Assembly: GCA_904063045.1 (NCBI GenBank)
Contig: CAJFCJ010000009.1
Span: forward strand, 1,674,968-1,738,967
Source of the DNA: Dimorphilus gyrociliatus
Taxonomy: Eukaryota; Animalia; Annelida
Length of the DNA: 64,000 nt
Reading direction: 5' to 3'
The notes under the pieces were generated by a model, which was not told the DNA's origin, searched no databases, and was given only the letters and a program-made list of their open reading frames with translations. Made by a program: the position numbers and the translations under genes. How positions within the stretch are numbered: position 1 is the stretch's first letter; each line of letters opens with the position of its first letter. Shown here piece after piece: positions 44,720 to 64,000 of this stretch.

Positions 44720-47021
44720 ATGACAGAAGGTGTGAAGCTAAATGGAACCTGCCCTCCGCCTGGAAGCCCTGTTATAAATCCTGTAAGATAACTCTTATTT
44801 CTCAATATTTTTGCAAATGGAAACCTGATTGAGTGCGCTAAAATTTAAGCTATTCCTTGGAATCTAGCCGAAAACTTTATTCGAGAATGTTTTGTAATCA
44901 GGGCTTCTGATAGATTGTTTCAAGGTGAAATCGATCTGAAATTGCAATATAGTTTTTTTAGGAAAATTATTCAATGCATAATAGAGTTTTAACATCAAAA
45001 AATTATTATTTAAAAACCAATATTAGGTTTTATCAGAATGTTAAAGGAAACTTCTTTGAAAAGAACAATGGTCTGAATCTTTCTGCTATAGTTAACTACT
45101 GTTCATATTAATTCTATTCAAAACGGCTAATAAGTTAGCCGAAATTTTGTGACTAATTCATACTTTTCAATATTAAATTCTTTGAAAGATTTTATTGAAT
45201 TATGTTAAGGAATATGGTCTTATTTAATTTCATAACGTTCTTTCGAAGAGAACATTATCTCGATATTCAATGCAATATTGAACTATATGCTATGAAACTT
45301 AGTATAAAAGTTGGGATATTTTAACCCCTTAAGGGTTTCTATTTAAGTTTACTTACGAATCATTTAGAATATGAAAGAGCTGTGTTAGAACTTACTTACG
45401 TTGAGTGAAAGAAAGCCTTATTTTAAACGTTCTTTTCTAACTTTACCCTTTAATCCATTAACTATACTTTTCTGAATTTAGGCTAACAGGTTTCTTCTTT
45501 TTCTAGACAGATCAGTTTGATAACTTACCTCAATATATTCTCACAGTGGATTGTCTGTCAAAACTTTTACAGATTCCGTGAATCTCAAAATATATTGAAT
45601 TCAGTATTATTTATTTACAGACCATCCCTTACAATGGCCCTTTACTCCCTTTACAATCACAACAAATGATAATCATCCAGGGGTATATTTCACCTACTTG
45701 TACATCCTTTAATATATCTCTGTTGGTAAGTAATAACAATGTTCAAGAAAAGAGCGACGTTGCCCTGTGCATAACTATCTGCTTTACGGAGCCATCTTGT
45801 ATAAAACGTAATAGTTTTCTACAAGGAAGCTGGGGCCTAGAAGAAAAAGAGGGCCCAACCTTCCCTTTAAAGAGGGGTCATACTTTTGAATGCATAATTT
45901 TAGTTCAAGAAGATCATTTTAAAATGGCATTCAATCAGCAACACTATGCTGAGTACAGGCATAGAATTCAAAAAGAAGTAGTTACCAATTTATACATCGA
46001 TGGAGATATCAATATTCAGACGATATGCTTTCAAGGACCTGGCATACCTTCTAGACCAATTAACCCACTTGCTAATGTTCATTCTACTTCATCAGTAACG
46101 GTTATGCAACATCAATCACATCCTGTGATGAATCCACCCGTTCCATTTGTGATTCCAGTTGTTCCAGTAGCTAATGATCAAACAATTTGCCTCCGTGGAC
46201 ATGTAAAAACTGGAGGAAGCCGCTTTAGAGTTAGATTACAATTAGACGTAAGCCTGACAGGAGATGCTGCTCTTGAGACTTTAGTAAACATGACTGACGA
46301 AGTCGTTTCTCGTGCTGATGTACAGCAAGGCCAACGACAAATGGAAGAAACCACTGGCCCACCATTAACTGTGCGTCCGGGTCAACCGTTTGAACACATG
46401 ATTCTTATACAAGAAGACTGCATTAGATTAGCGTTCAACGGATCTCATTTTGCTGACTATCGTCATAGAATATCCAAGAGTAACATTACTCATTTCAGTG
46501 TCGATGGAGATATCCTTGTTCAAAGTGTTTTCTTTCAAGGACCTGGAATACCTGTTCCCAACACAATAGCTCAACGATCGCCAACTAGTGCTAATTCTCC
46601 TACTATGTCTTTTCCAGTACCATATAAGTGTCCAATTCCAGGAGGTGAATTTCATGGACGAATGATTTATATTTGTGGTGTCCCAGATGTCAGAGCGAAG
46701 CAGTTTGTTGTTAATCTTCGTTGTGGAGAATCAGGTACGAGTGATGTAGCGTTTCATTTCAATCCCAGATTTGCTGAAAACACTGTTGTACGAAATACGC
46801 ATACCAGTGGAGCATGGGGAAACATGGAACGGGATCACAATAGCTTTCCTTTTACTCCTGGTGTTCCTTTTGACATGATTGTTTTGTGCGAAAATGAGCA
46901 ATTTAAAGTTGCTGTCAATAATCAGCATTTTATAGAATACAAGCATAGGTTACCCAATTTGAAACAGATTAATTGCTTGGAAGTTGCTGGAGATGTTAAA
47001 CTAACTAGAGTGCAGTTGTGA
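44720..47021 (+). CDS. Galectin with three tandem carbohydrate-recognition domains (exon 1 44720-44782, exon 2 45621-47021)
   Basis: Three galectin-fold repeats, each ending F/Y-x-[ED]-Y-[RK]-H-R. Only the third has DVAFHFNPRF..VVRN..WGNMER. The 838-bp intron is phase 0 and in frame. Confidence 0.9.
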
Positions 47022-47636
47022 CTTAGACTGTTTCCTGAGCTATTGTTTGTTTTTAATGCTTGCCAAATAAAAATTTGTGTCTCTTTTTCTGTGGCTTTCA
47101 CTGATGACTTGATCTACAGGTTTTATTTTTTTACAAGATTTTATTGGAACCGTTTACAGCATGTAATTAATGTATTCTAAGTTACGTTATGTGACATTGT
47201 TTAAAAAAAATTGCAATTTATGCCTAAAAACGATTTGGATCTGTTTAGTTATCAAGTAAGAATTAGAAGTGGTTTACTCCTAATAAACTTATAACTAATT
47301 AGCTTAAATATTAATCAATTAGAGAATGTGTAGTCAAACAGCTGATTTAAAAAAAAGAGGAAATCCAGGCCATTTAGTATATTATTGAAGTCAAACAGCA
47401 ATGTTCTTTTAGCTTTCTCTCACACCTTTACTGACTTATCTTATCAGCCATGTCGTTATCAGACACACTGGCCGTTACGATATAAAATATGTCTTTACAT
47501 AGGTAAATGGAAATTTTGAATTTAACAAAAAAAATGTTTACATGATTGATAACACGTGTTTTTTATTAAGTGAAAAATGTCATTTAATAGTTATAGTGAT
47601 TGTATTTAACAAGGTCTGCGAGAAATAATAGTTTTA

Positions 47637-50231
47637 TCATTTAGTGCTAAATCCATTACCATTACCATAATTCATCCACTGTTGACCGTACCATTGTTGA
47701 GCTGAGTAGTTATTATACCAATCTTGATCTGTTTTCTTGCGCTTTGACGATGTGTCACCTGAGTAGTCGTCTGGTTTGCGTTTATTATTTCTTTCTTCAT
47801 CCTTTAGCAGTGAGTGAGCAAGTTTAGCTTCCTCAATTTGTTTAACATCAGACGATAAATCATCAAGAAAGTCCAATCTAGATTGAGAGAAATCCAAACG
47901 CTCTTTAACAGTAAAAGTGGAGCTATTTATGCAATCATCAAAGAACTTAAATAAGTTTTCAAAGTCTTGTGCGGTATATAATAAGTTAATTATGAACTGA
48001 GTTAATTTATAATTAGATGATTCAACTCTTCTAACATTTTCTAAAACCGCCTTAGCCTTGTCGAGATTATTCAAAATTTTATAACAAAATCTGGCATACT
48101 TTTCAGCCCAAAATATTTTAACTTTAGAATTTACTGAGGACTCTACAGCTGAATGATACAACTTATCACATTCTTCAAGTTTATTGTAACGTCTTAAAAC
48201 TCCCACTCGGTGTACTATTACAGCTATGATTCCTGGATGTCGAGCTTCAAACTGGTCCAAAATTTTAATAGCGCTCTCCATTCCTGAAATATTTTCTTCG
48301 AAATGTGACCAACTCAAAGCTAAATTAACTTTCATCGGTAAATGTACATTACACGCTCTTTCATAAATGCTTCTAGCCTCTTCAATATGAGAATGATCGG
48401 TCATATATTTTGCATATTTCAGCCAAAATTCTTCATAGAGTGCGCATGAAATGAGACACCTTTCATAAAGGAAAACTATTCTAGTATGATTTTCCTGCTT
48501 CGTTTCATAATCGAGATACTCATGCCAATTTCTTAGTTGAGATCTTTCTATTGGTTTGACATGAAAATATGGTCGCTTTATTGATTCCTCGAAATTCCAG
48601 CGTTTGTTCACTTCAATTGTTGTAGCTTCATGAATAGGTTGTCTTAAACTAAGCATTTTATCTTTTATCAGTCTATTTTCTTCTTCAGCTAGCAAAGGAA
48701 GATCATGTGGATCCATACTATTTTCCGTACATTTACCAAGAGTATCAGCGGCTGTAGCAGGAATGAGGTTTGCTGCTATCATAGCATCTTCATTAGGCGT
48801 GGCAGATTTCGCCATTTTTACAGCTTCTCTTCGTTCTTCCTGAATTTCTCTCTTGAAATTTATATAATCTTCTTCTGGTAAAATATCAACTGGTTCTGAC
48901 CCTTGAATTATTTCAACTAGGGATAAATAATGAGCTGTATACTGATGTGTAGGAATAGCTATAAGTTTATCATAAAGGGATAGCACATTTCTTAAGTTAC
49001 GCTTTTGACTTTCCCAATCAAGTGCCATTTGCCATAGTCGATCTGATTTAAATTCCAAACCACAAGTATCAATAGCTCTAAGGAATAAGTTTCTGATATC
49101 GTCATCATTTTTACTGTTCCTGTCCTTAAATCTATGCTTAATTGTCCATTCTAAATAATGTATCCATAAATCAACCGATAATGGAATCGCTTTTACGCCC
49201 TTTTCAAAGATCTGTAGAAAAACACAGATTTAATTTAATTTTTTAACTAAAAGTATTTCAACTGACGTATACAGTAAAAAGACCCTTTTCTATATCTGAA
49301 ATTTACAAATTTATCTTAGAGCCAGCTGGAATTGTAAAAAATAACTGTTAATATTTATGCATAATATTGCATTTCGCATACCAAAGAAGGACTAAGCCTC
49401 TTATCTATTTACTTTGTACGTGCTCTCGAAATACTTTATATTTTAACCATGTCTGAAAAGCGGAATTGATCTATCGGAATGGACTCAATAGTTTTACTGT
49501 TACCTTCTCAACCTCGTCCGCTCCTTCGTGATTTTTAATAAGGTCAGCGTACTTTTTCCAATATCCATAACAATAAGGGTAGTGGGTTAAAAAGCTGTCC
49601 ATGCCATTTTTAATTTCTTCAACTTTGTTCTATAAGATAAAATTAAATAAAATTACTCATTAAAATTTGGATTTGGAACTCACTTCATTTTCAATCAGTT
49701 GTAAAAGATATGTCCAGGAATTGAAATCTTTAAAATCGGATTTTACTTTAGCCCAGTAAGTTTTTATCTCCTTTGCTGTGCTAGCCAATTCTTCTTCGGC
49801 TTTTTCCGGTGGTGATGTATCCTGAGTGCCGCAGTTAGTTGCATCTGAAGTGTCTGTTGATTTACTAATCGTTTTATTTCCATCCTTAGAGGGTTTAAGT
49901 TCGGTTATTTGAGATCTATAATATTCGGCCCATTGTTTTGCTAAATTTGCTTCTTCCATACGTCCCTCATTTTCAGCAGAAATTGCTTGATTATCATAAT
50001 ATTCTGCCCATTGAAGTGTATGATCTGTCTGATTGTTCGAGTCTTGGCCATTTGTTTCAATATTTGAATCTGTTTCAAAACAATAGTCATAACGCATGAA
50101 ATACGTTTCGGATACGATAGATTGAATAAATAAAGTCACTAAACCCTATATACTATTCCTTTGCGATTTCTTATAGCAGCATTTACAAGAGAAGAATTAC
50201 CTTGTTTTACTTCCATTTCCATAGTCGCCAT
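47637..50231 (-). CDS. PRPF39: Pre-mRNA-processing factor 39 (U1 snRNP HAT-repeat protein), 4 coding exons
   Basis: [88 protein letters not shown] and [19 protein letters not shown]. Confidence 0.95.
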
Positions 50232-51171
50232 TGCTTAACTTGGCTTAAGTCAAAACCAAATGCGTGAATAGCGAATACAATTACCGGAAGTCAAAAGAGT
50301 ATGTAAAATAGTAACAACCACGTAGACTTAACAATGCGACACTTAGTGGCTATATATAGTAATGGCGGAAATTTCCTTATAAGTATTGATTTTTTTTAAA
50401 TTTCAACTAAAATTTCTTTTCTTTTACAGATAATACAACATTTACATTATTTAAAAAATATCTGCTAAACTAAGTAGAATTCTTAAAATTCTGAGGACTT
50501 TAATTAAAATTATTTATATCTTCGGCCATTTTGTTTCGCAAATTTTCTTCTTGTCGCTGTTGTCTCTTTTGGACAGAGAATATTGGTGTAGCATTCTCCC
50601 GAATTCAAATGCTAATACCATGCAAGTTTTTCAGTATCGACTCATAATAAACAAAACAGTATTGCCTAAAATATATATCTAGTAATTAACCATTTCTCTT
50701 TGCAAAATAATGTTAATTTAGTTAAAAACATACATAAGAAGAATACATCTATATGATATAATATTTCCACAATTTCCACATACAATACATCATTCAAACA
50801 AAAGTTGACACATAATAATATTTTATCGATAAGGGAAAAGTAAATTCTCGTATAACTTTGGTAATTTTTTAAAAAGACGTCTATTTAATATTAAAATTTT
50901 TAACAACTAACAGCTGAGTTTTATCATACTTTTAGAATAATGAAAGTGTGGGAAATTTATGCTCAGAGATCCCTATAATAATTGATTGTAGTTGTAAAAG
51001 TTGGAATATATTTTTTTATATGAATAGACGTAACGTGATTTGTTGGAAAAATTTAGGATAAATAAAAAAAAATCAGTTCAAATATGTTCTTCTTTGTCGT
51101 GAACTTTCATAATCATGCAGCTTAGATTAGAAAGAATTTTTTTTCGGAAATATGATATGTCCTGAGAGTCA

Positions 51172-51240
51172 TTACGTCATTTAGTTCTTATGCAAATACG
51201 AAAATGATTCGTCAATGCATACTCACGTGATTGGCGCGAA
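51172..51240 (+). promoter_or_regulatory. Dense transcription-factor motif cluster upstream of the HMG-box gene
   Basis: TTACGTCA (51172-51179), octamer ATGCAAAT (51190-51197), E-box CACGTG (51224-51229), reverse CCAAT (51230-51234) and E2F-type GGCGCGAA (51233-51240). Confidence 0.55.
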
Positions 51241-51256
51241 TGGTAATACCCCTAAA

Positions 51257-54200
51257 ATGTGCGAACAAGCGAATATGACTGATGAAAGCAAAGGTAATGA
51301 AAATTTAACTTCAAGTTGAAACATTTTTTGAAACACTTTTCAACTATAAAACTTTCATAGAAACTTTATCGAACATTTGAGAGTATATGTATGTTTTTCG
51401 ATATCTTTGTAAAATCCAGACGGATGCTAATTTTTACCGTTAGTGTCTGTTGATGGAGCGGTCACTGACCTAAATTTTTAATTATCTTGGCAATTAGTTT
51501 ATATCTTGCTATTTTATTCTTTTGAAAGTTGTTACATTATATTACTTTAAATAAAGTTATCAAAAAAGTTTGAGAAGTTAGGATTTTAAATTTTAAATTG
51601 TAAGAATGAGGGCAGACATATTGGATTTTTCCTTCCAGAATATTTCATCTTCATCTGAATTACCCCAAACCACATTTAATTGACTTATTATGAAGTCTTT
51701 AAAACTTTTAGAACAAAAACTATCAATTTATAACGAAACTTTGTTTAACTCAAACTGACCTGTTCACTCTTGGAGAATTTTGTTCTCGAAAATTTGGCCA
51801 TTTTTGTTCATGAATTCAGTGATATATTTTAACATAAACATGATTACTGGTTACTAATATCTCATTTTTCTGAATAGGTTTTGGTTGTTCTGATAGTGAC
51901 GGGTATTCAGCTCTTCAGTGAGTAAAAAAATTTTACTCAATGAAATTTTTGAGAATTCATTAACTTTTTTTTATCAGAAATTTTGGCACTGACTTGGACC
52001 AAGAAAATTCTGTTGTTAGCAAAGACTTACTCCTGTCACTAGCAATGTAAAAAAAATTAATTTTAATTAAATATTACTAAAGTGTTCCTTTTAGGGATAC
52101 AAACATAAATTCTCAGCTATTTAGTACTAGTAAACGTTCTTCATCGAGTAGCAGTAGTAATCAACTTCGTAAGTACATTGTACAATATTCAACCGATTTC
52201 GTATACACTAAAATAGTCCCTTCAATATAATTGAAGAACTATTAATTTTTTCACTTTAATCTAAAACGTTTAAATCTGGTTTTTATAAACAGAGCTATTA
52301 CAAGTTAATCGAGATATTATAGAATTAGACACAAAACCTCCTTGGTTTCTCGACTCTAATGAGGTAGTCGATAGGCTACAATCTGCAGCTTACAATTCTC
52401 AGATAGGTATATAGAAAATATAATTTTACGGCCTCATTGAACTTAATCTAAAAACTATTACTCTACATTATTAGACTTTGACTTCAATTCTACGTCGGCA
52501 GAGGAAGCAGCTCCTGACAATAGGTTAGCTAACAATTACTCAATAGTCTTAAATCGTAGTCATAAAGTGCTAAACTTCGTAATAACTTATTTTTCTTCAA
52601 TTAGTCATGATTGGTGTATAAATGGGACTCATAGGTAAGGCTTGCATTATAAAATATATAGTATTTTAAATACATACTACTCGTATTTTAGTAGCATCTT
52701 GAGCCAAAGTGATATATCACCAGTATTTCCTCTAACTCCTACTGATTCTAATAAAGAAATAACTGACGGTAAATATACAAGAATCTACATAAACTTTATA
52801 ACGTTCACATCTGTAATTCAACAGATGAAAATTCACAGAAAGTTAAGTTGTCTCCCGATTCGGAAGTTAAAGCCGAAACCACTGATGGAACTGTTCCTGT
52901 GTCATTGGATATTGGAGAAGGTAATTTTCCTTTTTTCTCAAGTTTTCAACTTAACCTTCATTTTTTGAAGTTGTCCAATCGAACGATAAAACAATCGCTG
53001 ACAAAATCAGGTACGTTTTCTTTGCAGTGTATTTACATTTACAGAACATTTTTCTCTAAAATTCGTTTAGAGAATCTTGTCAAAGCAGAGCATCCGTCGA
53101 TTCTAACAAGGAGGAAAGTACTGGTAATAATTCTCTTATATGTCATTTTTCTTTTAACATTTTGTATAAGTCATAATTGTTTCAATTTTATTCTGTTATT
53201 GTAAGTCAATCCATCAGGCAATATTCTTTGAGTTTGTTTATTCGGTAAGTTGACAGTGCTTGAATCAATATTTCCGAACATTAAATGTCAGTCTTAGTTC
53301 TGTTTAGGATATTACTAGTTCCAGCTATAGAGAAAACTTATATTTTCGTTATAATTTAACATAGGTTTTAAATAACCTTAATAAAATAGTAAAAAAAGAG
53401 CGGAAACTCAAAAACCAGAAAGTTTTTTTATTTTTTCGAAAGAAATGAAGTAAAAAAATTGACATTTTTCAGAGGAAATTAGCGAGCCAAAACTGAATTC
53501 TTCCGATATTAAAGATACCACCCAGCATAATCCGGCTAAATTTACTTTAGATCAAGTAACACCTACGGTATGTTGAACTTAACTATCTTGTTCCATCTCC
53601 ATAATACGTTTGCAGATTGGAACAAATATCTTAAAGAAGTTGGACTACATCATTCAAGAGAAAAATACTCTTTTTGATAACTTCTTTCGAATAAAGCGTA
53701 ATAATCGTTCGTTTTTTATATTAAATTTTCTGATAACTTGTCTAATAAAACTATTTATCGTTTTAATTCATTAGAGAAAAAAGTCTGTTCAATTAAAAGA
53801 GAGCACGAGGTAAAAATTTCTCATTTTTATTTTACAGTAAAATAATAATTTGTTTTTACTTTGATAGCAAATTAGCATCAATGAAACTCCGAGGAAAGTA
53901 GGTGAACGCCGAAGGAAACCTTTATATAATTATAAATTGAAAAAAACAGTTAAAAATGGTAAGATAATTTTGGGAGTTTTCAAGATTGAATGATATTATT
54001 TTTTAGCTGAGACTTGTGAAGTTAGTGAAAAGCCTATATTCAAATGGCCCGAATGCCCTACTGGAAGAAGAAAAAAGTTTGTAGCGAATTCTTCAAATAA
54101 ATGCTATTAATTAATATTTCATATAACTTTCAAAAGGGTGAACGCTAAACCAAAACGAATTAAAGAGAAAAGTAAACGCCTTTGGAAGAACGGATTCATG

Positions 54201-55584
54201 CTTTTCGCTAAAAAGTATCGAAAAGCATATTCAATGTAAGAATTTAATAAAAAGCTTGGTTATAAAAGCGTAAATAATATCTATGCAATTTAACATTTTC
54301 AATAGTGCAATGCGTTCTGGAGACGTGCCAAGAACATCAAATTTAATGAATGCTGTCTCTAGATTATGGAGTTCTTTATCGTCATCAGAAAAAGAGAAGT
54401 ATAGCCTTAATTATCTATATGAAGAGGAAGAAACTGATAAACCCTGTGAAAATTTATCTCCCTTTGAACTTCCAACTGAGAGCTCTAATGTAGTTGATAT
54501 TGGGAAGGGTAATGAAATTGATAATCCTGCATGCAAAGAGTATTCTTGCAAACGAAGAAAAATTTCAAGTACAAAAGCAATAGAAGTAAATTTTAAGAGA
54601 AGAAAAACAGAAACAGACAGCAGCAATTATGAGAAACTTATGGGACAGGAAATTATAGAACAAACAACTCATTTAGATAATCCCAACGATAGTGAAGATA
54701 TGCTGAAAATTTTTGATAAGACACCTGAAAAATTTATATCGAATCCATACGAACATTCGTCGAGAATTAGTCCTGCTGTTTCTCGACGAAAGAGAGTACG
54801 GAAGAGTCTCAATTTTGACCATTTGCTTTACGATCAAAGATCCCCTCTCTGCTTTGAAATTCCTGATGTAAATGTATACACTTTACTTCAGGATTACGAT
54901 CCCCCTGACGATTATACTGTTCCAGATGTGTATGATAATGAATATCTTGATTACAAATGGGATTATGATGAAATAGCCAACGTTAAAGAAGCAGATAATT
55001 CAGACTTTGAGTCTCCGAAAATACCTTCAAAATTAAGAACACTTAAGATCATTCAGGAGCCTGAATTGTTATCACAGCAAAAGTTACCAATTTCTATCAA
55101 TATCACTGAACTATTAGAAAGAAACGAACCAGTGATTAATGTAACAGAGCAGGCTTTTAAAAAACAAGGCTTTCCTAATCAACCTGTGAGACTTGTTCAT
55201 ACTCCGAATGTTACTTTGCATCAAGCGAAACCTTCGTCAAGTTTTGCAAAGAGTTCAAACTCTAGAATCTCTGGAGTTAAACACGTTTTTACGTTTAATA
55301 ATTTCGTTAAAACCGCCGAAGAATCGAAAAATCAATCCATTTCAACTGAATCACAATCTACAGACATTAAAGAAAATCAAGAAAACGCTAGTAAAGATAT
55401 CCACACTGTCTTTCAGTTGTTTGAGAGTAGCAAATCTGATAAATATATAGCTGCGAGACCAGCTGGAAATATTGTTTTAAGGTTAACTAATGGAAATGAC
55501 GAAAGTACTGTCTACAAGATTCCTGTTGTAACTTCGGAAGGTGCATGTAAAATTCTATCACTGTTACCTAAGAACAAGAAATAA
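51257..55584 (+). CDS. Multi-exon low-complexity nuclear protein with one central HMG box (exon chain only partly resolved)
   Basis: Splicing 54137-54235 to 54306 gives KRLWKNGFMLFAKKYRKAYSIAMRSGDVPRTSNLMNAVSRLWSSLSSSEKEKYS, an HMG-box pattern. More than ten small GT-AG-flanked exons lie at 51878-54080. One phase conflict near 53570 is unresolved and the 5' end is uncertain. Confidence 0.6.
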
Positions 55585-55888
55585 AGCTCCATGTATGTTT
55601 GATTTTGTTACCTTTAAGAAGAAAAATATCAAATCCACCTCTAATTTTTTTATGCTTATTTAGCGTCTAACGAATTTCATAATTACAATTAAAAATCTAT
55701 GTTGATCTATGGTTGTTCCATAGTTGTTCGTCTTTCAAATGTAAACTTTGTTAACGTGTTTTGATATGTCAGCTAAATTTAAATTTTTCGTTCTAATTAT
55801 ATTAATTTCTCAATTCTACGTAAGCTTTTATTAGTAATTATTTTATCAGTAATATCTAACGCAATAGTTAATTTGTTTAAATGTCATT

Positions 55889-56818
55889 TCATTCCTTAAC
55901 CGTATCAGGTTGACTTGGAACGTCAAAATTAAATACATCATCTCTCGAGTAATGACCGATAACATCAAACTCCAATTTACTTCTAATAATATCTTCCAAA
56001 TCCAAAGTAGCATAAAGAATTCCTGCTTCATTAAACAATGGTCCAGCTATGATTTTTCCTAGAGGCGAAACAATCACACTACCACCAGTTGTAACGATAT
56101 CAGGTAGTTCTTTTATACCTTCTAAGTGCAGAATATCTTCGGGATAATCTGTAGCTTTAACAAATTGATTACAGCTCAAAACAAAGCATCTGCCTTCTCT
56201 AGCAATATGCTGCATACTTGCAACCCACGTATCTCTATGATCAGCTGTTGGAGCCAAATAGATTTCAACTCCTTTATTATACATTGCCATCCTAGCCAAA
56301 GGCATGTAGTTCTCCCAGCAAATAAGCCCGCCGATTTTGCCAATACTTGTATCAAAAGTCGATAAAGTATCTCCGCTACCTTCTCCCCATACCATGCGTT
56401 CTCCAGCTGTAGGCTTCAGTTTTCTGTGTTTTCCAAGAAGTTTTCCGGCAGGAGAGAAATATAAGATAGTGCAATACAGTGTTCCATTTGAAATAGTATC
56501 TCTTTCTATAACTCCAATCACTAAGTAAATGGAGTTTCCTGCAGCTATGCTAGCCAAGCGGTCTGTTGCAGGCCCTGGAACCTGTACAGAACTCTTAACG
56601 TATTTTAACCAGACTTCGCGACCCTCCTCAGTTCGATTTCCCACAACCGTGCCAAATTTAAGACTCTTCGGATAACTAGATACAAAAGCCTCAGGAAAGA
56701 GAATCAATTTTGCCCCTTCCGATGCCGCCTCCTTTGTCAACTTCTCAACTTTTTCCAGGGTATTCTCTAAGTCGAATATTGCGGGAGAATCTTGAACTAC
56801 TGCAACTTTTACTTCCAT
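55889..56818 (-). CDS. Branch-1 (true) nitrilase, carbon-nitrogen hydrolase, 309 aa, uninterrupted ORF
   Basis: Catalytic Glu-Lys-Cys triad in FPEAF, HRKLKPT and ICWENYMPL, with the C-terminal signature FDVIGHYSRDDVF of nitrilases proper. Confidence 0.93.
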   Translation of the reverse strand: MEVKVAVVQDSPAIFDLENTLEKVEKLTKEAASEGAKLILFPEAFVSSYPKSLKFGTVVGNRTEEGREVWLKYVKSSVQVPGPATDRLASIAAGNSIYLVIGVIERDTISNGTLYCTILYFSPAGKLLGKHRKLKPTAGERMVWGEGSGDTLSTFDTSIGKIGGLICWENYMPLARMAMYNKGVEIYLAPTADHRDTWVASMQHIAREGRCFVLSCNQFVKATDYPEDILHLEGIKELPDIVTTGGSVIVSPLGKIIAGPLFNEAGILYATLDLEDIIRSKLEFDVIGHYSRDDVFNFDVPSQPDTVKE

Positions 56819-57631
56819 TATCAGCTTTATTTGGTATAAGGATTGATAATAATAACTTTAAAATGAAAGTTTGCTTTAAATAGTAGTTAACTTTGTTGGT
56901 GTTACGCATGCGCATCTTGTCATAACCTAGAAAAGTATTACTCAGCAAAAAAATTACAAAAACGTTCAAACCGAACGCTATTATTACATCAGCTGGAAAA
57001 AATGAAGGCAAACGATCTAAGTTCAAGAAAGATTACTATCTTTTGAAAAGCCTTTAGGTGGACTGGAATGTTTAAAATTTTGTATATATTTTCTGATTTT
57101 CCTCTGAAATGAAGAATCTAAGAAAAGTTTATATATGTAAATTAGATTAGAGGTCACAAAGAACTAGGTCAAAATAGTGTTCTACACTCTTTTGTTATTA
57201 CGGGCAGTTGAAACAATGTAAGAATATGAAATAACAAGGATAAAAATATGTAATTTAGAATGTTCAATAAATGAAATATCTCTATTATATGTACAATAAT
57301 ACAACGTTAAATTCTCGGATAAAGCTTAAATAGTGGACAGGTTAATTATGTTTTTTATTATAAATAATAGTAACTATTGTGATAGAACGGTATATTTCGG
57401 CCTACTTATTATAATTTAGAGTTGTTGAATAGAAAGAAAAAGAAGAAATGATAGCTTAAATTTTCCAAAGAAGTAACGAATTCTTTCTGTATTTGTCTAG
57501 TTTTTTTTATGAATCTTCTTATCTAATCTAACTAAATTTATGGGCTCTTTTCAAGTATTTGGCCAGACAAAAACAATGGAGTAGAATGTTATATTTGATG
57601 TATTTTTTAGCGACCTCTATTGGATTAGAAA

Positions 57632-58414
57632 ATGAATTACAATTTGCTCATTGTCGCTATATTTATTGTTTTTTTTCAGTCGTTCGTTATATTATCTTTA
57701 TCAAATATCGTCGTTAGACCAAACGAAGTTGGTTGCGAATATAATGGAACTTGCTTATTCCCTCATGATCCCCATGGGCCTCTAGTCTTGTGCGAATACT
57801 TGTAAGTGGACGATAATAGGTGAATTTATGTTGACAGTAATTACGATTCTTCTTAGGCCACACGAATATTTAAAATGTGATGATCCAGAATATGTTGGTG
57901 ATAATGAGACAAAAAGAAAAGAGCTGGGCTACGGATGTACAAAGGTGTTATATTAAATTAAATTAGATTACTACGACATTGTTCTGCTAATTGAAAGATA
58001 AATTTTTATTAATTTTCAGTGGGGTGGTTTAAAATATGAAGATGTGGAACACAGTCGAGTTATGTGTGCAGTTCTTCCGGGAATTGAGTGCTACGGCAAT
58101 AGGCAATTCTTAAGTCTAAAAAGATATCCATGTATAAAGTATAACGGACATTATTTTGTCTCAACACTTTTGTATTCAGTTCTTCTAGGTTTCCTTGGTA
58201 TGGACAGATTTTGTTTAGGTCATACAGGTAAGTGGAAAATGTTTCTTAATAGCAGAAAGTTTTTAATACAACTGGTCTAATTCTATCAGGTACCGCGATT
58301 GGAAAATTGTTAACGTTAGGAGGTGTTGGAATATGGTGGATAGTTGACATTATATTATTAGTGACTGGAAAACTAAACCCAGCAGATGATAGTAACTGGA
58401 TGCCTTACTACTAA
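57632..58414 (+). CDS. TM2D2: TM2 domain-containing protein 2, 4 exons
   Basis: Signal peptide, [106 protein letters not shown]. Confidence 0.93.
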
Positions 58415-58994
58415 ACCATTTTTCTCAACCATCCTCAAAAAATAGAAAGAGATGAATCTTATCAAAGAAATTTGCTCAGTTTATGCAACTGTTTGATACT
58501 TTCTCCAAAAGAAGTCACTTTAAAAGAGAAAGAAAACTGCAAAAAAAAAAAATCAAAAGATTGTACACTTGTGATTTTTTTTTTAATTTTTACTTTAGAA
58601 TTAAATGACACTTATAATGTAAAATTATTTCTTTTTTCTTACAAAAGACATTTTTATTAAAAGAGAAAAACTACTTTGGTCTTTTAAGTTTTGTTTATTA
58701 AATTATTCTCTTAGCCACTTTTTGCAGAAATTCAATAGGCAATGGAAATAATAGAACTTTAAAATATCGTTTATATCATTTAAGAAATTTATTACTAAAT
58801 TTTTTTATAACCAGCCTACATAACAAAAAGATAAAAAGATTAAAATTGTGACTTTTCAACTATATATAATACTTTTTCACTGATTTTTAGCTTTTTTTTT
58901 TTTACATATAATGCGAATTTGGCACCGCAAACTTTTCTACAGTTAAATCTTGTAGATCTTAATTGTTTCTGATCCTTGTTTTTTTGTGGAGAGA

Positions 58995-61713
58995 TCAAAG
59001 TGATCCAATATTTGAGTATTTCGTAAAAGAGAAATATTCCTTATCCTTATATAGCACTGGAGCTGCCCTAAATTCGACAGACTTTAATGGCATTCTTCCA
59101 AAGGCGTGAACAAATTGGGTAATACATTCCGATCTTTCTACCATATGAGCTAAATCAGCAGACAACATATCCGAGTTTATACAACTGGCTGTTGAACACT
59201 TGAATTTTTTCCTAGGTCCGACCTATTAATAACGATTAATTAGTAATATAGACTTGAATATTGATAAAAAAATCACTTTTAAAGGTGCTTTCCCAGTGAG
59301 ATTAGCGATAATAAAGTTCATAGCTATATCCTCGCAATTCATATTCTCGTCAATCCATAATTTGAGTTTTTGAGGCAAGTATTTAGTATATGCAAAAGAG
59401 TAGTACTAAATTTGATTTAAACGAATAAAAAATTCAATTAGACGGATGAATAATGGGCGAAAAATAAATATAAGAACCTTGTGATAGAAAGAAGCTCCAG
59501 TAAGAACCATTGATATAGAACTTGTCCATTCGGATTCATATTTCCATGAATCGGTTTTATTATTCCACAAATGTAACCGACTAGGAAATCCTACTAAACG
59601 ATCAGGAAATTCCCGCCAAACCTAATAATAAAACGATAATAAAATTAAATTGTCAACTTGTAAACAAATAGCCAATTAGATATTTACCTGATATGCGAAT
59701 TCCAGTTCATCAATTGTCAGCATTAATATATCATCGTCCAGCGATAAAATAGCTTCGGTTTCAATTTCGGCATAAGGATAGAATCTGTTATGTAGACTGT
59801 TTCTAGGTGTTTGTAAAATTCGAAGAGGAACATTTATATTCGGCCAGTTCGAAGCTAAAAATACAAGTAATAAATTAATTATCTAGAAAATATTATCCAA
59901 AATAACAGTAGCTATATTTAATCAACTTACTAGGTGGCGGTTGTTTCTTTTGATTATTCCAAATGACTAGAACTTTTGATAATGATGGTGCAGCAGATAT
60001 TTTTCGTATTAAATCAAATAATGATGTTATTCTATCATAACTTAATATAACAGCTGTAAATCCATTATGCTTGAGTGGTCTTACAGGTAGGAATAGAGGA
60101 TCTTTAATTGGCACCTGTGTATTAGATTAGTAGTTGTATTGTTAGATGATATAATAAGTATATAAAATATAATATACCTGTAATTCATTCCAATCTTCAT
60201 AAGATTTAACATCGTACGGAAAAACTCTATCATTGATTATTTGAAGTGTTGCTAAGGTTATTTCCCTCATTGACCTATTTAAAGATGAATTATATTTATA
60301 GATTACAAGAACACTTAAGGAGAAAAATCATCGTATTTACTTGAAATATTTATCCCATATAAAAAGAACTTGACTCTGCATTTCTAAGATTCTATCAGAT
60401 CCTATTCTCTCTAATATTTCAACTATTTCAATTAGTCTGGACTCTTCGACACGTATAACGACCCTATTTATTTAAAAGGTTATTCATAACTGTATCCAAG
60501 GTATCTTATATGATAATGAGAAAAATATTTCACCTTTTCCAGTCTATAACATCAACAAAAGGAAGAACATAACTATCCATTGCAATAACAGGTATACAAC
60601 CATGCTGCATGGCTTCTGATAATATTGTTTGACTGAATCTGGATACTCTTAAAACCAAACAGAAAGTGACGCTCTAGTTAAAGGAGAAAAAATACATTTC
60701 AATTAAATATCATACAAATATTTATATAAGATTATTATTTACGGAGAGAATTGCAGGATAATGATACACTCCTCTTAAGTTGCATCTTTCTGTAAAATTA
60801 AAATCCCCTTCGCATCTACTTAAAACTAAAACTCCACGAGATCTCTCAGTAACCCTTTCTAACTGTTCACGATGTGCAGGATCAATACCAATTTGTGATG
60901 ATACTAATAACCAATCCCGTTTGTTGTTTCTATTAAAAAATAGTTAAAATAGATTAAAAGACTAAATGAATTGTTTCTTTATCGTTTACTTGTGAGTATA
61001 GGTATAATGGTGTGTCAACGGGTTAAATAATGGAATAGATATATCAAAATTCATCCTGTAGGTTGAAATGTCTAAACCTGAACCAGCAAGAATAGAATTT
61101 CCTCTATTAATTTCTAATTTTGTTGCATAATTTGGTGTAGAGCCTGGCAGCATATTAAAGAGAAGATGGTTTTCACCATTATTCCATCTGTTTTAAAATG
61201 AATAAACAAACAAATAGGAGAATATAGATGGGCTATTAATTTAATAAACTATTTAACTTACAATGGTAATGCCGATAGACAACGATCGATCATATCCACT
61301 TTAAGGTTATTCTGATTTAATAGATCGATTTGAGGAACAAATACACATGCCTTCTTTGGATCTGAAGTTACAAATGGACTTTCCAATATAGCATCAATTA
61401 TTTGCATGAACTCTTTTGACCGAGGTAGCATGACTGGACTGCCGTTGGCATGGACGAACTCAATGTATGGATAGACGTATACGGATATCTTATTAACATC
61501 GTTATTACCACAATTATATACATTAAAACATGTATGAAATAGACAACTGCTGTTTGTTTGACTGGCTCGACGATGATTATCAGTTACTACATATTGTTTT
61601 GGCTGTCTCCTCGAGATCCAGTTGGAATCATTTTTCATATATATCCGTAGGAAGACGAGTGAAGATATAACAAATATGATGAAGAGTAGTATTCGGAAAA
61701 CAATGTTTCTCAT
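58995..61713 (-). CDS. EXT2: Exostosin-2 heparan sulfate co-polymerase, about 10 exons
   Basis: Type-II membrane anchor, [75 protein letters not shown], and the C-terminus [23 protein letters not shown]. Confidence 0.95.
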
Positions 61714-62213
61714 TTTAATGATTAATCAGTAAATGATTTTACCGATACTCGAACAAGAGTGACAATTTTGTTCCTGATTTCGACGTCATTCATCCAGCAG
61801 TAAAACAAATATGGGAAAGTAAAATTTTACAAGAAAGATGCTTTAGGGCTGACTACAGAGGGCGTGAGTTAAGTCAATCATACAATCTCGTTTCCTAACG
61901 CGAAATAACGTGGGAGTTTATCATTCAAATAGTTCTAACACAATAATACCACGCCATATAATATTATGTTTAATATATGAGTAGTATCTTAATAAAAGCG
62001 AATTCCTTTGATAAATTTAGAGGTTCACATTAGCTTTATATTACGTATATTACATAATTAAAACCTGCTTGACATCACCTATACGATGAATTTTTTCAAA
62101 TTTCAATCATTCCATCGAACTGAACAAAGTATTTACTTTGAGCAAAAAATCACTAGAAAAAGTTTAAAATAAAGTTATTAAACGGTTGAAAAATCAATAA
62201 ATATCAATATAAT

Positions 62214-64000
62214 ATGTCTTCTAGTCAATCTGCCGTCGAACTGAATGAAATAGATAATGAAAAGTTGCCTAAAAGAGCTAAATCTCAATCGAAAACATGT
62301 TTGTTTTTGTTTGTTTGTTTGTTTGTTGTCTTAATTTTAACTTAAGAAAGATAAATGAATATTTTTTATTCAGCTGGTGTTAATAAGAAGAGTTTATCAA
62401 AGTTAAATCAAAAGAAATCGTCGTTAGGCAAGCAACGATCGTCTTCGAGGCAGGCTGTTGTAAGAAATGGTAGAAAGTCTAAAGATAATTTGCGAAAATC
62501 GAGACAAACTAAACAGACTAGTAAAATTTCTCTTAGTTCCGTTTCGCCAAAGATCTCTGGACAGAGTAGAGGTAGATCCGTTGGATGTTGTCCTTGCCTT
62601 GATGGTGATGACTCGGATTACGAAATTAAGAAGACGAGTACCAATACGAAACCTACAAAGGCAAAGGGTCAGCGAAAGGAGTTATCTAAGAAAGATATAA
62701 GGGCTTTAGAAAAAGTTCAAGAGAAAATCATGGCAGCGAAAGAGATTCAAAGAAATGCTAAAGCGCAAAAGGCCGCTGAAGTAGTTGAAAGTACGAAAAC
62801 TATTGAGGCTATCGTGGAGAGGAGGCAGGTTGAAAACAATGAAAAGGCAGAGGACGGAACAGAGGACAACCCACCTGCTGAAACTGATATTACAAACGGT
62901 AATCAGAATGAAGGAAGCGAAGCAAATCCATCGATGACGAGTGGAGATCAATTACCGTTGACTGAGACTGAGGAGACTATCCCCGAACAGCTTAGAAAGG
63001 ATAACAAAAGGCAATTTGAAAGTATCGAAAAGAAACAGGAACTTTCGCAACAAATCGAAAAGAGAAAAACTCTGACCGAGTCTAATGAATTGGAAGAACC
63101 CTTTTCTACAAACGAAGATGTTGTCATCTATCAACAACAAACCAAAAGAAGAAATGATTTGATTCCATTCTTCTTAAGAAAACAACCAAAGAACGAAGGG
63201 AAGATGAACCGTCACATCCTAGATAATTGGTTTAGGGCTGTTGACGATAGCGAAAATATTCCAACTCACACGAATACACTGTATGATGATAAAGATTTGA
63301 GCGGATTGTTAGACGATGTTGATGAATTAACTGTATTATTTAAAGCGATAAATAGCTTATACAAAGATTTATCTTCCAAAGAGCAAAAGCTTCATTTTGA
63401 ACTATCTAACATGAAAGACGTTAGGAAACAGTTACGAGAACTAGAGCAAGTGTCATCTCTAGGTAGAATTATGAGTGACATTTCCAACTTAAAACAGAGT
63501 AGCATGACGATAAAGGATCAACCTTCTAAGATGTCCAAAACGTCGTCTAGGTGGATGAGGCCCAAGTCCGCAATAGAGATTATTCATAATTTCTCCAAGA
63601 AGTGGAAGGATACGTCTCAAAACGATGAACAACTATCAGTTAGAGAGATATCGAAAACTCCTTTAATAGCGACAGAGGCTTCGGAATCTTCCGATCAGGA
63701 TATTGAACCAACAGCCCCTGTGAAGAAGGGTAATCCTTGTTGGGTTATTGCAAGAGATAGTATGAAATCATCAGAGTTTACATCTAAGAGAAACGATATG
63801 AGAGAAGCCTTTCTTAAAACTTTAGAAGAGCATATAGAATATCCAGGACCCACTTTTGGAAAATATCGTATGCCAATTGCAAACTTTAGAATTCCAATTC
63901 CATTACCAAATTCATCTTCTGTCGGTAGTTTTCAACTTCAAGAATTATATAAACAGCATTTTGCATCTCTGGCATCCAATACGGAAACTAGATATTTTCC
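62214..64000 (+). CDS. Orphan charged/coiled-coil protein, runs off the window end
   Basis: Exon 1 MSSSQSAVELNEIDNEKLPKRAKSQSKT, an intron with (TTTG)n, then a frame open from 62374 to 64000 (over 540 codons by my reading) that the ORF track misses because it has no stop in the window. No family recognised. Confidence 0.7.
62298..62328. repeat. (TTTG)n microsatellite in intron 1 of the orphan gene
   Basis: TGTTTGTTTTTGTTTGTTTGTTTGTTTGTTG read directly from the sequence. Confidence 0.8.

What the first reader, a model, noticed from the sequence alone, without database searches (positions are those of the whole stretch)
55889..56818. Bacterial-looking branch-1 nitrilase embedded among animal genes: candidate horizontal transfer
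The usual animal nitrilase-superfamily members are NIT1, NIT2, beta-ureidopropionase, vanin/biotinidase and NAD synthetase. This protein instead has the true-nitrilase signatures (FPEAF..YP, RKLKPT..ER..WGEG, ICWENYMPLARMAMY.KGVEIYLAPT.D, EGRCFVL..NQ, FDVIGHYSR). Its compact 309-aa length and QPDTVKE end resemble Bacteroidota enzymes as I remember them. It is collinear with spliced host genes on both sides, which argues against a contaminant contig. It could give nitrile or cyanide-derived detoxification or nitrogen scavenging. Caveats: NIT4-like genes are annotated in some other invertebrates, and other genes here are also intronless.
Basis: partly seen in the sequence, partly recalled or inferred. 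Interest (0 to 1): 0.75.

Follow-up and report, generated by a model that had tools for sequence, protein, structure and literature searches.

The report
Bacterial nitrilase gene in a worm
The tiny marine worm Dimorphilus gyrociliatus carries, inside its own chromosome, an intact nitrile-degrading enzyme gene that came from a Bacteroidota-type bacterium. The gene has since been duplicated and kept under selection, which makes this a clean but not unprecedented case of bacterium-to-animal gene transfer.

Summary
Window 55889-56818 (-) is an intact 309-codon ORF for a branch-1 nitrilase: PF00795 E 5e-58, best solved relative Arabidopsis NIT4 at E 1e-99, and the catalytic E43/K133/E140/C167 are all present.

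The genome is the annelid Dimorphilus gyrociliatus, and the gene lies on a 2.69-Mb contig between animal genes. An independent assembly of a related worm has the orthologue (81% aa) at the same place in an 18-kb collinear block. That rules out contamination. Synonymous sites are saturated while dN is 0.12, so the gene is under purifying selection.

In a careful ML tree, the worm sequences form one clade (100/89). This clade is sister (100/98) to a metagenomic Bacteroidota contig and nested in Bacteroidota nitrilases. Nematode nit-1 and plant NIT4 lie elsewhere. AU tests reject one animal clade (p 1e-10) and one eukaryote clade (p 1e-101).

A second copy on another contig (59% id; noted earlier by the scan as s1-082771) has one GT-AG intron and a 6-residue deletion of the NIT4 "lid" loop.

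Horizontal transfer, then duplication, is well supported. The substrate (probably beta-cyanoalanine) and expression are inferred, not shown. I class it as a new member of a known kind.

The parts
55889..56818 (-). Intronless coding sequence of a 309-aa branch-1, NIT4-like nitrilase of bacterial origin. Catalytic tetrad E43, K133, E140, C167. Long NIT4-type lid loop with R62, and its acidic partner E283.
   Evidence: ORF. Pfam and PDB matches. Invariant residues. Tree placement. Purifying selection.
55827..55832 (-). AATAAA hexamer 57 nt after the stop codon, a possible polyadenylation signal. The evidence is weak.
   Evidence: The orthologue and the paralogue also have a signal hexamer within 60 nt of their stops, but 25% of random 100-nt stretches of this AT-rich window contain one.
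56815..56822 (-). Start-codon context gatAATGG (A at -3, G at +4). This is eukaryote-like, and there is no Shine-Dalgarno-like purine run upstream.
   Evidence: Read directly from the sequence. It is suggestive only.
54283..55584 (+). Neighbouring host gene, tail-to-tail with the nitrilase: a 433-aa ORF with no Pfam family, conserved in the related worm.
   Evidence: blocks at 57-62% aa identity, collinear.
57597..58444 (+). Neighbouring host gene, head-to-head with the nitrilase and about 0.8 kb from it: a TM2-domain protein in several short exons.
   Evidence: Pfam TM2. Conserved exon blocks at 70-98% aa identity.
58968..61752 (-). Multi-exon host gene further out: about eleven conserved blocks separated by short gaps, exostosin/GT64-like.
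   Evidence: Block pattern from tblastx. The weak Pfam hits (Exostosin_GT47, Glyco_transf_64) are on the orthologous contig. The one window ORF I tested gave no Pfam hit.
45666..50139 (.). Further host genes in the same collinear block: a triple-domain galectin (+) and the splicing factor PRP39 (-).

Best explanation
This is a working, host-integrated nitrilase gene that an ancestor of Dimorphilus gyrociliatus and a related dinophilid-like worm acquired from a bacterium, most likely a member of Bacteroidota.

After integration the gene duplicated. The copy in this window (contig C9) kept the bacterial layout: 309 aa and no intron. The copy on contig C62 gained one 87-nt GT-AG intron, a 10-residue insert around it, and a 6-residue deletion in the substrate 'lid' loop.

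The encoded enzyme is a thiol nitrilase of the nitrilase superfamily. C167 attacks the nitrile carbon, helped by E43, K133 and E140. The thioimidate intermediate is hydrolysed to a carboxylic acid plus ammonia, and in NIT4-type enzymes partly to the amide.

The window copy keeps the long NIT4-type lid loop, its arginine (R62, equivalent to AtNIT4 R95) and the acidic partner (E283, equivalent to D317). Its most likely substrate is therefore a small nitrile such as beta-cyano-L-alanine, giving aspartate/asparagine and ammonia. That would complete cyanide detoxification and return nitrogen to the animal.

Shown here: the gene, its catalytic residues, its bacterial ancestry, its chromosomal integration, its conservation in a second species, and purifying selection.

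Inferred: the substrate, the physiological role, and transcription.
For: Enzyme identity.

Bacterial ancestry:
- The best non-worm hit is a metagenomic contig protein at 66% identity. Its contig is gene-dense and bacterial, and encodes a Por_Secre_tail (type IX secretion) protein.
- That contig's PrmC matches Bacteroidota genomes best: 179 and 170 bits, against 151, 98 and 88 for Bacillota, Deltaproteobacteria and Thermomicrobiales genomes.
- After that hit comes a wall of bacterial proteins at 60-64% identity (Fulvivirgaceae, Roseivirga, Chloroflexota).
- Careful ML tree: worm clade 100/89, sister to that contig 100/98, nested in Bacteroidota-rich sets at 99/91 and 98/89. Two quick trees give the same topology.
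- AU tests reject worm plus nematode monophyly (delta lnL 184, p 1.4e-10) and all-eukaryote monophyly (delta lnL 271, p 1e-101).

Integration:
- The gene lies on a 2,686,630-bp contig next to animal genes.
- A related worm's 42-kb contig is collinear with window 45750-64000, with the nitrilase in the same slot.

Function retained:
- Between the two species dN is 0.123 while pS is 0.749, i.e. saturated.
- The tetrad is invariant.

Duplication:
- The paralogue is at G000:C62 and its intron boundaries were read.
- The database's own spliced model, P0302, agrees with those boundaries.
- The related worm's fragment P0125 shares the paralogue's indels, and its ORF ends at the intron site.

Substrate: the lid-loop residues were mapped onto AtNIT4 using the alignment and PMC6637149.

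Published precedent: eukaryotic class-1 nitrilases are reported as several independent transfers from bacteria (PMC10098168).
Against: - No RNA data could be consulted, so transcription is not shown. The polyadenylation hexamer and start-codon context are weak evidence.
- Base composition does not discriminate: the gene's GC3 of 0.31 fits host ORFs (0.24-0.38), but the nearest bacterial contig is also low in GC at 0.36.
- Two of the three AtNIT4 specificity positions differ (L169 is G139 here, S224 is H194). The gene is also not in the plant NIT4 clade. The beta-cyanoalanine assignment is therefore only about even odds.
- Bacterial relatives have no conserved gene neighbourhood that would point to a substrate.
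- Absence from other lophotrochozoans rests on hit lists capped at 120-150 rows, and on cluster representatives that can hide animal members inside bacterial clusters.
Confidence: 0.87

Rival explanations
1. Vertical inheritance. The gene is an old eukaryotic or animal branch-1 nitrilase, related to plant NIT4 and nematode nit-1, retained in dinophilids and lost in most other animals.
For: Branch-1 nitrilases do occur in plants, fungi, Amoebozoa and nematodes. Arabidopsis NIT4 is the best solved relative.
Against: The worm clade sits deep inside Bacteroidota sequences. It is separated from the plant, fungal and nematode group by a 99/96 branch. One animal clade is rejected at p 1.4e-10 and one eukaryote clade at p 1e-101. 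Identity to the bacterial contig is 66%, against 49-52% to nematode and plant proteins.
Confidence: 0.04
2. Contamination or misassembly. A bacterial fragment was assembled into the worm scaffold.
For: The gene is intronless and bacterial-like. The genome paper reports removing bacterial contigs, so bacteria were present in the samples.
Against: The gene is on a 2.69-Mb contig, 0.3 kb and 0.8 kb from conserved animal genes. The same gene occupies the same slot of an 18-kb collinear block in separate Logan assemblies of other sequencing runs, at 74% nucleotide identity, so this is not the same DNA. A paralogue with a spliceosomal intron exists.
Confidence: 0.01
3. Two independent transfers. The C9 and C62 copies were acquired separately from closely related bacteria, rather than arising by duplication after a single transfer.
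For: The two copies are only 59% identical overall (54% by tblastn across the intron). Each is about as similar to the bacterial contig protein P0003 as to the other copy. They lie on different contigs.
Against: All four worm sequences form one clade that excludes P0003, with support of 95, 90 and 100/89 in three trees.
Confidence: 0.07
4. A decaying relic. The transferred gene is integrated but no longer functional.
For: No expression data are available. There are no introns in this copy.
Against: The 309-codon frame is intact in two species whose synonymous sites are saturated, while dN is only 0.123. All four catalytic residues and 90-odd invariant columns are kept. The ESM Atlas model of this protein has pTM 0.93.
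Confidence: 0.02

Closest known systems
Nitrilases of Bacteroidota: metagenomic contig protein P0003, and Fulvivirgaceae, Roseivirga, Cyclobacteriaceae and Saprospiraceae proteins annotated 'carbon-nitrogen hydrolase family protein'
   Same: Identity is 60-66% over the full length. The proteins are the same size (about 309-315 aa), have no indels relative to P0003, and end the same way (QP[ED]-x tail). The worm gene nests phylogenetically among them.
   Different: The worm gene sits in an animal chromosome, has a eukaryote-like start context, and is duplicated, with one copy carrying an intron. As far as I could find, none of these bacterial enzymes has been characterised biochemically.
Plant NIT4, the beta-cyano-L-alanine nitrilase/hydratase (Arabidopsis NIT4, PDB 6i00)
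   Same: It is the best solved relative (E 1e-99). It shares the CEEK tetrad, the lid-loop length with its arginine (R95 = R62), and the acidic latch (D317 = E283).
   Different: Identity to a plant NIT4B-like protein (Typha) is about 51-52%. The worm protein lacks the 30-residue plant N-terminal extension and the longer C-terminal tail. Specificity positions L169 and S224 are G and H here. It belongs to a different clade.
Nematode nit-1 (C. elegans ZK1058.6 and orthologues across Chromadorea)
   Same: It is the other branch-1 nitrilase found in animals. In C. elegans it is induced together with cysl-2 and sqrd-1 by H2S (PMC3183046), which points to a sulfide/cyanide-linked role.
   Different: Identity is 49%. 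It forms a separate clade, sister to Burkholderia/Cupriavidus enzymes (100/93). Joint monophyly with the worm genes is rejected, so the two have independent origins.
Bacterial beta-cyanoalanine synthase transferred into mites and Lepidoptera (PMC4011162)
   Same: It is also a bacterial gene of the cyanide-detoxification route fixed in an animal genome.
   Different: It is a different enzyme (a PLP-dependent synthase, the step before the nitrilase) in a different animal phylum. I did not read that paper in detail here.

Membership tests
Nitrilase superfamily (Pfam PF00795, CN_hydrolase) | Full-length match to the family profile above the curated cut-off | tested here: met
   196.9 bits against a cut-off of 23.2, covering residues 4-278 of the protein and positions 1-252 of the 256-position profile.
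Nitrilase superfamily (Pfam PF00795, CN_hydrolase) | Catalytic Cys-Glu-Glu-Lys tetrad | tested here: met
   E43, K133, E140 and C167 are invariant in alignment A1. They align with AtNIT4 E76, K163, E170 and C197.
Branch-1 (class-1) true nitrilases | Closer to nitrilases and cyanide (di)hydratases than to NIT1/NIT2, beta-ureidopropionase, amidases and the other branches | tested here: met
   PDB hits: NIT4 at 1e-99, CynD and other nitrilases at 1e-48 to 1e-40, Nit2 at 2e-16, beta-ureidopropionase at 1e-10.
NIT4-type beta-cyanoalanine nitrilase | Long lid loop between helices alpha-2 and alpha-3, with an Arg (AtNIT4 R95) latched to an acidic residue (D317) | tested here: met
   The alignment with 6i00 has no gap across the loop. 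R62 aligns with R95 and E283 with D317. CynD is 5 residues shorter in this loop. The C62 paralogue lacks 6 loop residues, including the Arg.
NIT4-type beta-cyanoalanine nitrilase | Pocket residues L169 and S224 of AtNIT4 | tested here: not met
   These positions are G139 and H194 in the window protein. Bacterial relatives have A, and a variable residue (H, S, N or A), respectively.
NIT4-type beta-cyanoalanine nitrilase | Placement in the plant NIT4 clade | tested here: not met
   The plant sequence lies on the other side of a 99/96 branch.
NIT4-type beta-cyanoalanine nitrilase | Activity on beta-cyano-L-alanine giving Asp and Asn | not testable with these tools
   This needs an enzyme assay.
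Nit6803 / Nit1C nitrilase (TIGR04048) | Score above the equivalog cut-off | tested here: not met
   199.8 bits against a cut-off of 502.6.
Bacterium-to-animal horizontally transferred gene | Nested within a donor-domain clade with support, with alternative topologies rejected | tested here: met
Bacterium-to-animal horizontally transferred gene | Physical linkage to bona fide host genes, reproduced in an independent assembly or species | tested here: met
Bacterium-to-animal horizontally transferred gene | Absence from other animals outside the recipient lineage | tested here: inconclusive
   No other animal appears in the top 120 hits of two word searches. Among the 150 best cluster representatives of the exhaustive search, I looked up 30 in three batches of ten: 15 carried an organism name, of which the only animal was one nematode protein (the rest plants, fungi, an amoebozoan and a bacterium), and the other 15 were unnamed metagenome records. 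The lists are capped, and clustering could hide animal members.
Bacterium-to-animal horizontally transferred gene | Signs of domestication: purifying selection, host-like signals, introns | tested here: met
   dN is 0.123 with saturated dS. The paralogue has a GT-AG intron. The window copy itself has no intron.
Bacterium-to-animal horizontally transferred gene | Transcription in the host | not testable with these tools
   No RNA-seq data were accessible.

The most novel reading that the evidence does not exclude
The worm has built a two-step cyanide (or sulfide-linked) detoxification and nitrogen-salvage route. One part is a multi-exon cysteine-synthase-A-like gene in its own genome (C5:3588484-3589716), which would make beta-cyanoalanine. 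The other is the bacterial nitrilase, which would consume it. After duplication the second nitrilase copy lost the lid-loop arginine. In Arabidopsis NIT4, loss of that arginine opens the pocket to larger nitriles, so the C62 copy would be a neofunctionalised enzyme for other dietary or microbial nitriles. This would be an animal parallel to the plant NIT4 to NIT1 radiation, starting from a bacterial gene.
Probability: 0.25. Interest if true: 0.65.

Novelty: new member of a known kind. Interest (0 to 1): 0.5.

Why it matters
Well-documented bacterium-to-animal gene transfers are still few, and many have been disputed. This case has the full set of checks short of expression:
- placement in a donor clade, with topology tests;
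- chromosomal linkage confirmed in a second species;
- purifying selection;
- duplication, and intron gain in one copy.

It lies in a very compact annelid genome whose publication does not mention the gene (the genome paper contains no occurrence of 'nitrilase'). It also adds a second, independent animal lineage, besides nematodes, with a true nitrilase. It supplies a natural experiment on lid-loop evolution and substrate range. And it suggests how a meiobenthic animal living in microbial films may handle cyanide or nitriles.

Tried and rejected
- **Base composition as evidence of foreign origin.** Uninformative: the gene's GC3 fits the host, but the nearest bacterial contig is also AT-rich.
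- **Flanking repeats or mobile-element scars around the gene.** Only short chance matches turned up.
- **Conserved gene neighbourhood in Bacteroidota relatives as a clue to substrate.** None found; the neighbours are unrelated (SBF transporter, M14 peptidase, APH, arginase, flavin reductase and others).
- **Naming the second worm species.** The run accessions occur in no paper and in no scan note.
- **A paper search for invertebrate 'NIT4' annotations.** It was badly framed and returned unrelated papers. Three further searches found no report of nitrilase transfer into annelids or other invertebrates.
- **Partial-length cluster representatives suspected of being eukaryotic exon calls.** All are metagenomic records without names.
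- **Nit6803 and archaeal nitrilase equivalogs.** Scores are far below the cut-offs.

Full report
**1. The observation**

Window 55889-56818 (minus strand) is an ATG-initiated open frame of 309 codons. The window is AT-rich (about 32% GC), and 6.6% of all codon positions are stops. The chance of such an open frame is about 8e-10.

The protein matches Pfam CN_hydrolase end to end (E 4.9e-58). Among solved structures it is closest by a wide margin to Arabidopsis NIT4 (6i00, E 1.1e-99, residues 3-304). Next come cyanide dihydratases and other true nitrilases (E 1e-48 to 1e-40). Nit2, beta-ureidopropionase and the other usual animal members of the superfamily score E 1e-16 or worse.

It does not reach the Nit6803 equivalog cut-off (199.8 against 502.6 bits). 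The catalytic Glu-Lys-Glu-Cys tetrad (E43, K133, E140, C167) is invariant in an alignment with bacterial and plant relatives.

**2. Whose genome, and is the gene really in it?**

Scan notes name the genome as the miniature annelid Dimorphilus gyrociliatus. I confirmed this independently: the paralogue's database entry is named DgyrCDS14659 [Dimorphilus gyrociliatus].

The window is G000:C9:1674968-1738967, and the gene's contig is 2,686,630 bp long. The neighbours are animal genes:
- a TM2-domain gene lies head-to-head about 0.8 kb away;
- a conserved 433-aa ORF lies tail-to-tail 0.3 kb away;
- further out are a multi-exon exostosin-like gene, PRP39, a triple galectin, striatin and a C2H2 zinc-finger protein.

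The best database hit (P0002, 81% identity) comes from Logan assemblies of three other sequencing runs. Its 42-kb contig is collinear with window 45750-64000, gene by gene and exon block by exon block, and the nitrilase sits in the same slot. The two nitrilase genes are 74% identical in DNA, so these are two species, not two copies of one assembly.

This excludes contamination and misassembly. It also dates the integration to before the two worms diverged. I could not name the second species.

**3. Is it maintained?**

Between the two species, synonymous sites are saturated (pS 0.749) while dN is 0.123. This is strong purifying selection over a long time.

GC3 (0.31) lies in the range of host ORFs in the window (0.24-0.38). 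The nearest bacterial contig is also AT-rich, so composition says nothing about origin.

An AATAAA hexamer lies 57 nt after the stop, and the start context is A at -3 and G at +4. A quarter of random 100-nt stretches in this window contain a signal hexamer, so this is weak evidence. No RNA data were available, and transcription is not shown.

**4. Where did it come from?**

*Word-based search*. After the worm orthologue, the best hit is P0003 (66%), followed by thousands of bacterial proteins at 60-64%. The named ones are Fulvivirgaceae, Roseivirga, Chloroflexota and Candidatus Endobugula.

P0003 lies on a gene-dense bacterial contig that encodes a Por_Secre_tail (type IX secretion) protein. 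That contig's PrmC matches two Bacteroidota genomes best: 179 and 170 bits, against 151, 98 and 88 for Bacillota, Deltaproteobacteria and Thermomicrobiales genomes.

*Exhaustive search of cluster representatives*, with name look-ups. The nearest eukaryotic relatives are:
- plant NIT4B (52%);
- Pelomyxa (52%);
- fungi (47-53%);
- nematodes (49%).

A search started from the nematode protein found only nematodes and bacteria. GTDB genomes reach at most 62% identity.

*Trees.* The careful maximum-likelihood tree has 87 rows and uses LG+C20+F+G4. Support is given as ultrafast bootstrap / SH-aLRT. It shows:
- the four worm sequences form one clade (100/89);
- that clade is sister to P0003 (100/98);
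- the pair is nested in sets of 30 and 33 sequences (99/91 and 98/89), whose named members are nearly all Bacteroidota (many rows are unnamed metagenomic sequences);
- nematode nit-1 is sister to Burkholderia/Cupriavidus (100/93), on the far side of a 99/96 branch, together with the plant and fungal sequences.

Two quick trees with different sampling agree.

*AU tests.* They reject a single clade of worm plus nematode sequences (delta lnL 184, p 1.4e-10). They also reject a single clade of all eukaryotes (delta lnL 271, p about 1e-101).

*Alien-index-style comparison.* Best non-animal E is 1.1e-140 and best other-animal E is 1.9e-83. These come from two databases of different size, so the comparison is rough. 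It gives about 130, far above the customary threshold of 45 (the threshold is from my own knowledge).

*Literature.* A published analysis concluded that eukaryotic class-1 nitrilases are independently nested in bacterial groups, and that metazoans appear only in the class 10/13 outgroup (PMC10098168). The present gene is a further such case, in an animal.

**5. The second copy**

The genome holds a paralogue on contig C62. It is 59% identical to the window protein over the spliced length, or 54% by tblastn across the intron.

Its frame is interrupted by 87 nt with GTAAGC at the 5' end and a T-run followed by AG at the 3' end (L008 2204-2290). The database's own spliced model (P0302, 310 aa) uses exactly this junction. 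Its neighbour carries a CRAL_TRIO_N domain.

The full-length row in the trees is the database protein P0302.

Compared with bacterial relatives and with the window copy, the paralogue has a 6-residue deletion in the loop after the YPRGL motif. It also has a 10-residue insert that spans the intron site. The related worm's fragment P0125 (75% identical) shares both indels, and its ORF stops where the intron begins. Duplication, indels and very probably the intron therefore predate the species split.

The window copy has no indel relative to P0003 and the shorter branch. It is the more conservative descendant of the transferred gene.

**6. What it does**

The mechanism follows from established knowledge of the superfamily. 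The cysteine attacks the nitrile, and the thioimidate is hydrolysed to acid plus ammonia, or released as amide in NIT4-type enzymes.

For the substrate I used the Arabidopsis NIT4 cryo-EM study (PMC6637149). In that enzyme a lid loop from the neighbouring subunit limits pocket length. The loop is held by R95-D317, and positions 95, 169 and 224 account for most of the variation in specificity.

In the alignment the window protein has:
- the same loop length as NIT4 (cyanide dihydratase is 5 residues shorter);
- R62 at the position of R95;
- E283 at the position of D317;
- G139 in place of L169;
- H194 in place of S224.

Bacterial Nit4 enzymes are linked to 3-cyanoalanine use in Pseudomonas (PMC8567248). 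I therefore rate beta-cyano-L-alanine, or a similarly small nitrile, as the most likely substrate, at roughly even odds.

The paralogue has lost the loop segment that carries the arginine. In AtNIT4 the R95T change opens the pocket, so a shifted substrate range is a reasonable inference.

Two observations give context:
- The genome contains cystathionine beta-synthase (C15) and a separate multi-exon cysteine-synthase-A-like gene. The latter lies at C5:3588484-3589716, and three of its exons score 116, 96 and 55 bits to NF007989. An enzyme of this class could make beta-cyanoalanine from cysteine and cyanide. This is a lead only.
- In C. elegans the independently derived nit-1 is induced together with cysl-2 and sqrd-1 by H2S (PMC3183046).

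**7. Novelty and verdict**

The genome paper does not mention nitrilase, and cites horizontal transfer only in a reference. Searches for nitrilase with annelid, invertebrate or horizontal-transfer terms found no report of this case. The scan itself had flagged the intron-bearing paralogue on another piece (s1-082771), with no follow-up yet.

The kind of event is known: a bacterial metabolic gene fixed in an animal, and class-1 nitrilases moving into eukaryotes. The instance is new, and it is unusually well supported.

Remaining gaps are expression, enzymology, the identity of the second worm, the exact donor, and a full census of other lophotrochozoans. The capped hit lists used here cannot provide that census.

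Noticed in passing
L008 1492-2511 (G000:C62:29725-30744, + strand): A second nitrilase gene in the same genome, 59% identical to the window copy. It has one 87-nt GT-AG intron (L008 2204-2290), a 6-residue deletion that removes the NIT4 lid-loop arginine, and a 10-residue acidic insert around the intron. It is annotated as DgyrCDS14659, and its neighbour has a CRAL_TRIO_N domain.
   Followed up: yes
L095 1501-2733 (G000:C5:3588484-3589716, + strand): A multi-exon cysteine-synthase-A-like gene: three exons score 116, 96 and 55 bits to NF007989. It is distinct from the cystathionine beta-synthase on C15 (L094). It could be the beta-cyanoalanine-forming partner of the nitrilase. Its own origin, animal or foreign, was not examined.
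   Followed up: partly
Tree (proteins P0132, P0412-P0505 against P0431, P0433): Nematode nit-1-type nitrilases form one clade across Chromadorea. The clade is sister to Burkholderia/Cupriavidus enzymes (100/93) and nested among Planctomycetes and Alphaproteobacteria. This looks like a separate, older bacterial acquisition in nematodes.
   Followed up: partly
Protein P0037 in the trees: The nitrilase of Candidatus Endobugula, a gammaproteobacterial bryozoan symbiont, sits inside the Roseivirga (Bacteroidota) clade. A Lysobacterales MAG also falls among Bacteroidota. These are probably bacterium-to-bacterium transfers in marine settings.
   Followed up: no
window 54283-55584 (+): A 433-aa intronless ORF with no Pfam family, rich in acidic and serine stretches. 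It is conserved (57-62% in blocks) and syntenic in the related worm. Its function is unknown.
   Followed up: no
window 45666-47021 (+) against L001 19664-20929: The triple-domain galectin is 88-98% identical in protein between the two worms. PRP39 next door is only about 64% identical and the nitrilase 81%. The galectin is under unusually strong constraint, or gene conversion has acted on it.
   Followed up: no
Protein P0127 (Pelomyxa schiedti) in the trees: The amoebozoan nitrilase falls unresolved among Chloroflexota and other bacterial sequences, not with plants or fungi. This may be another independent eukaryotic acquisition.
   Followed up: no
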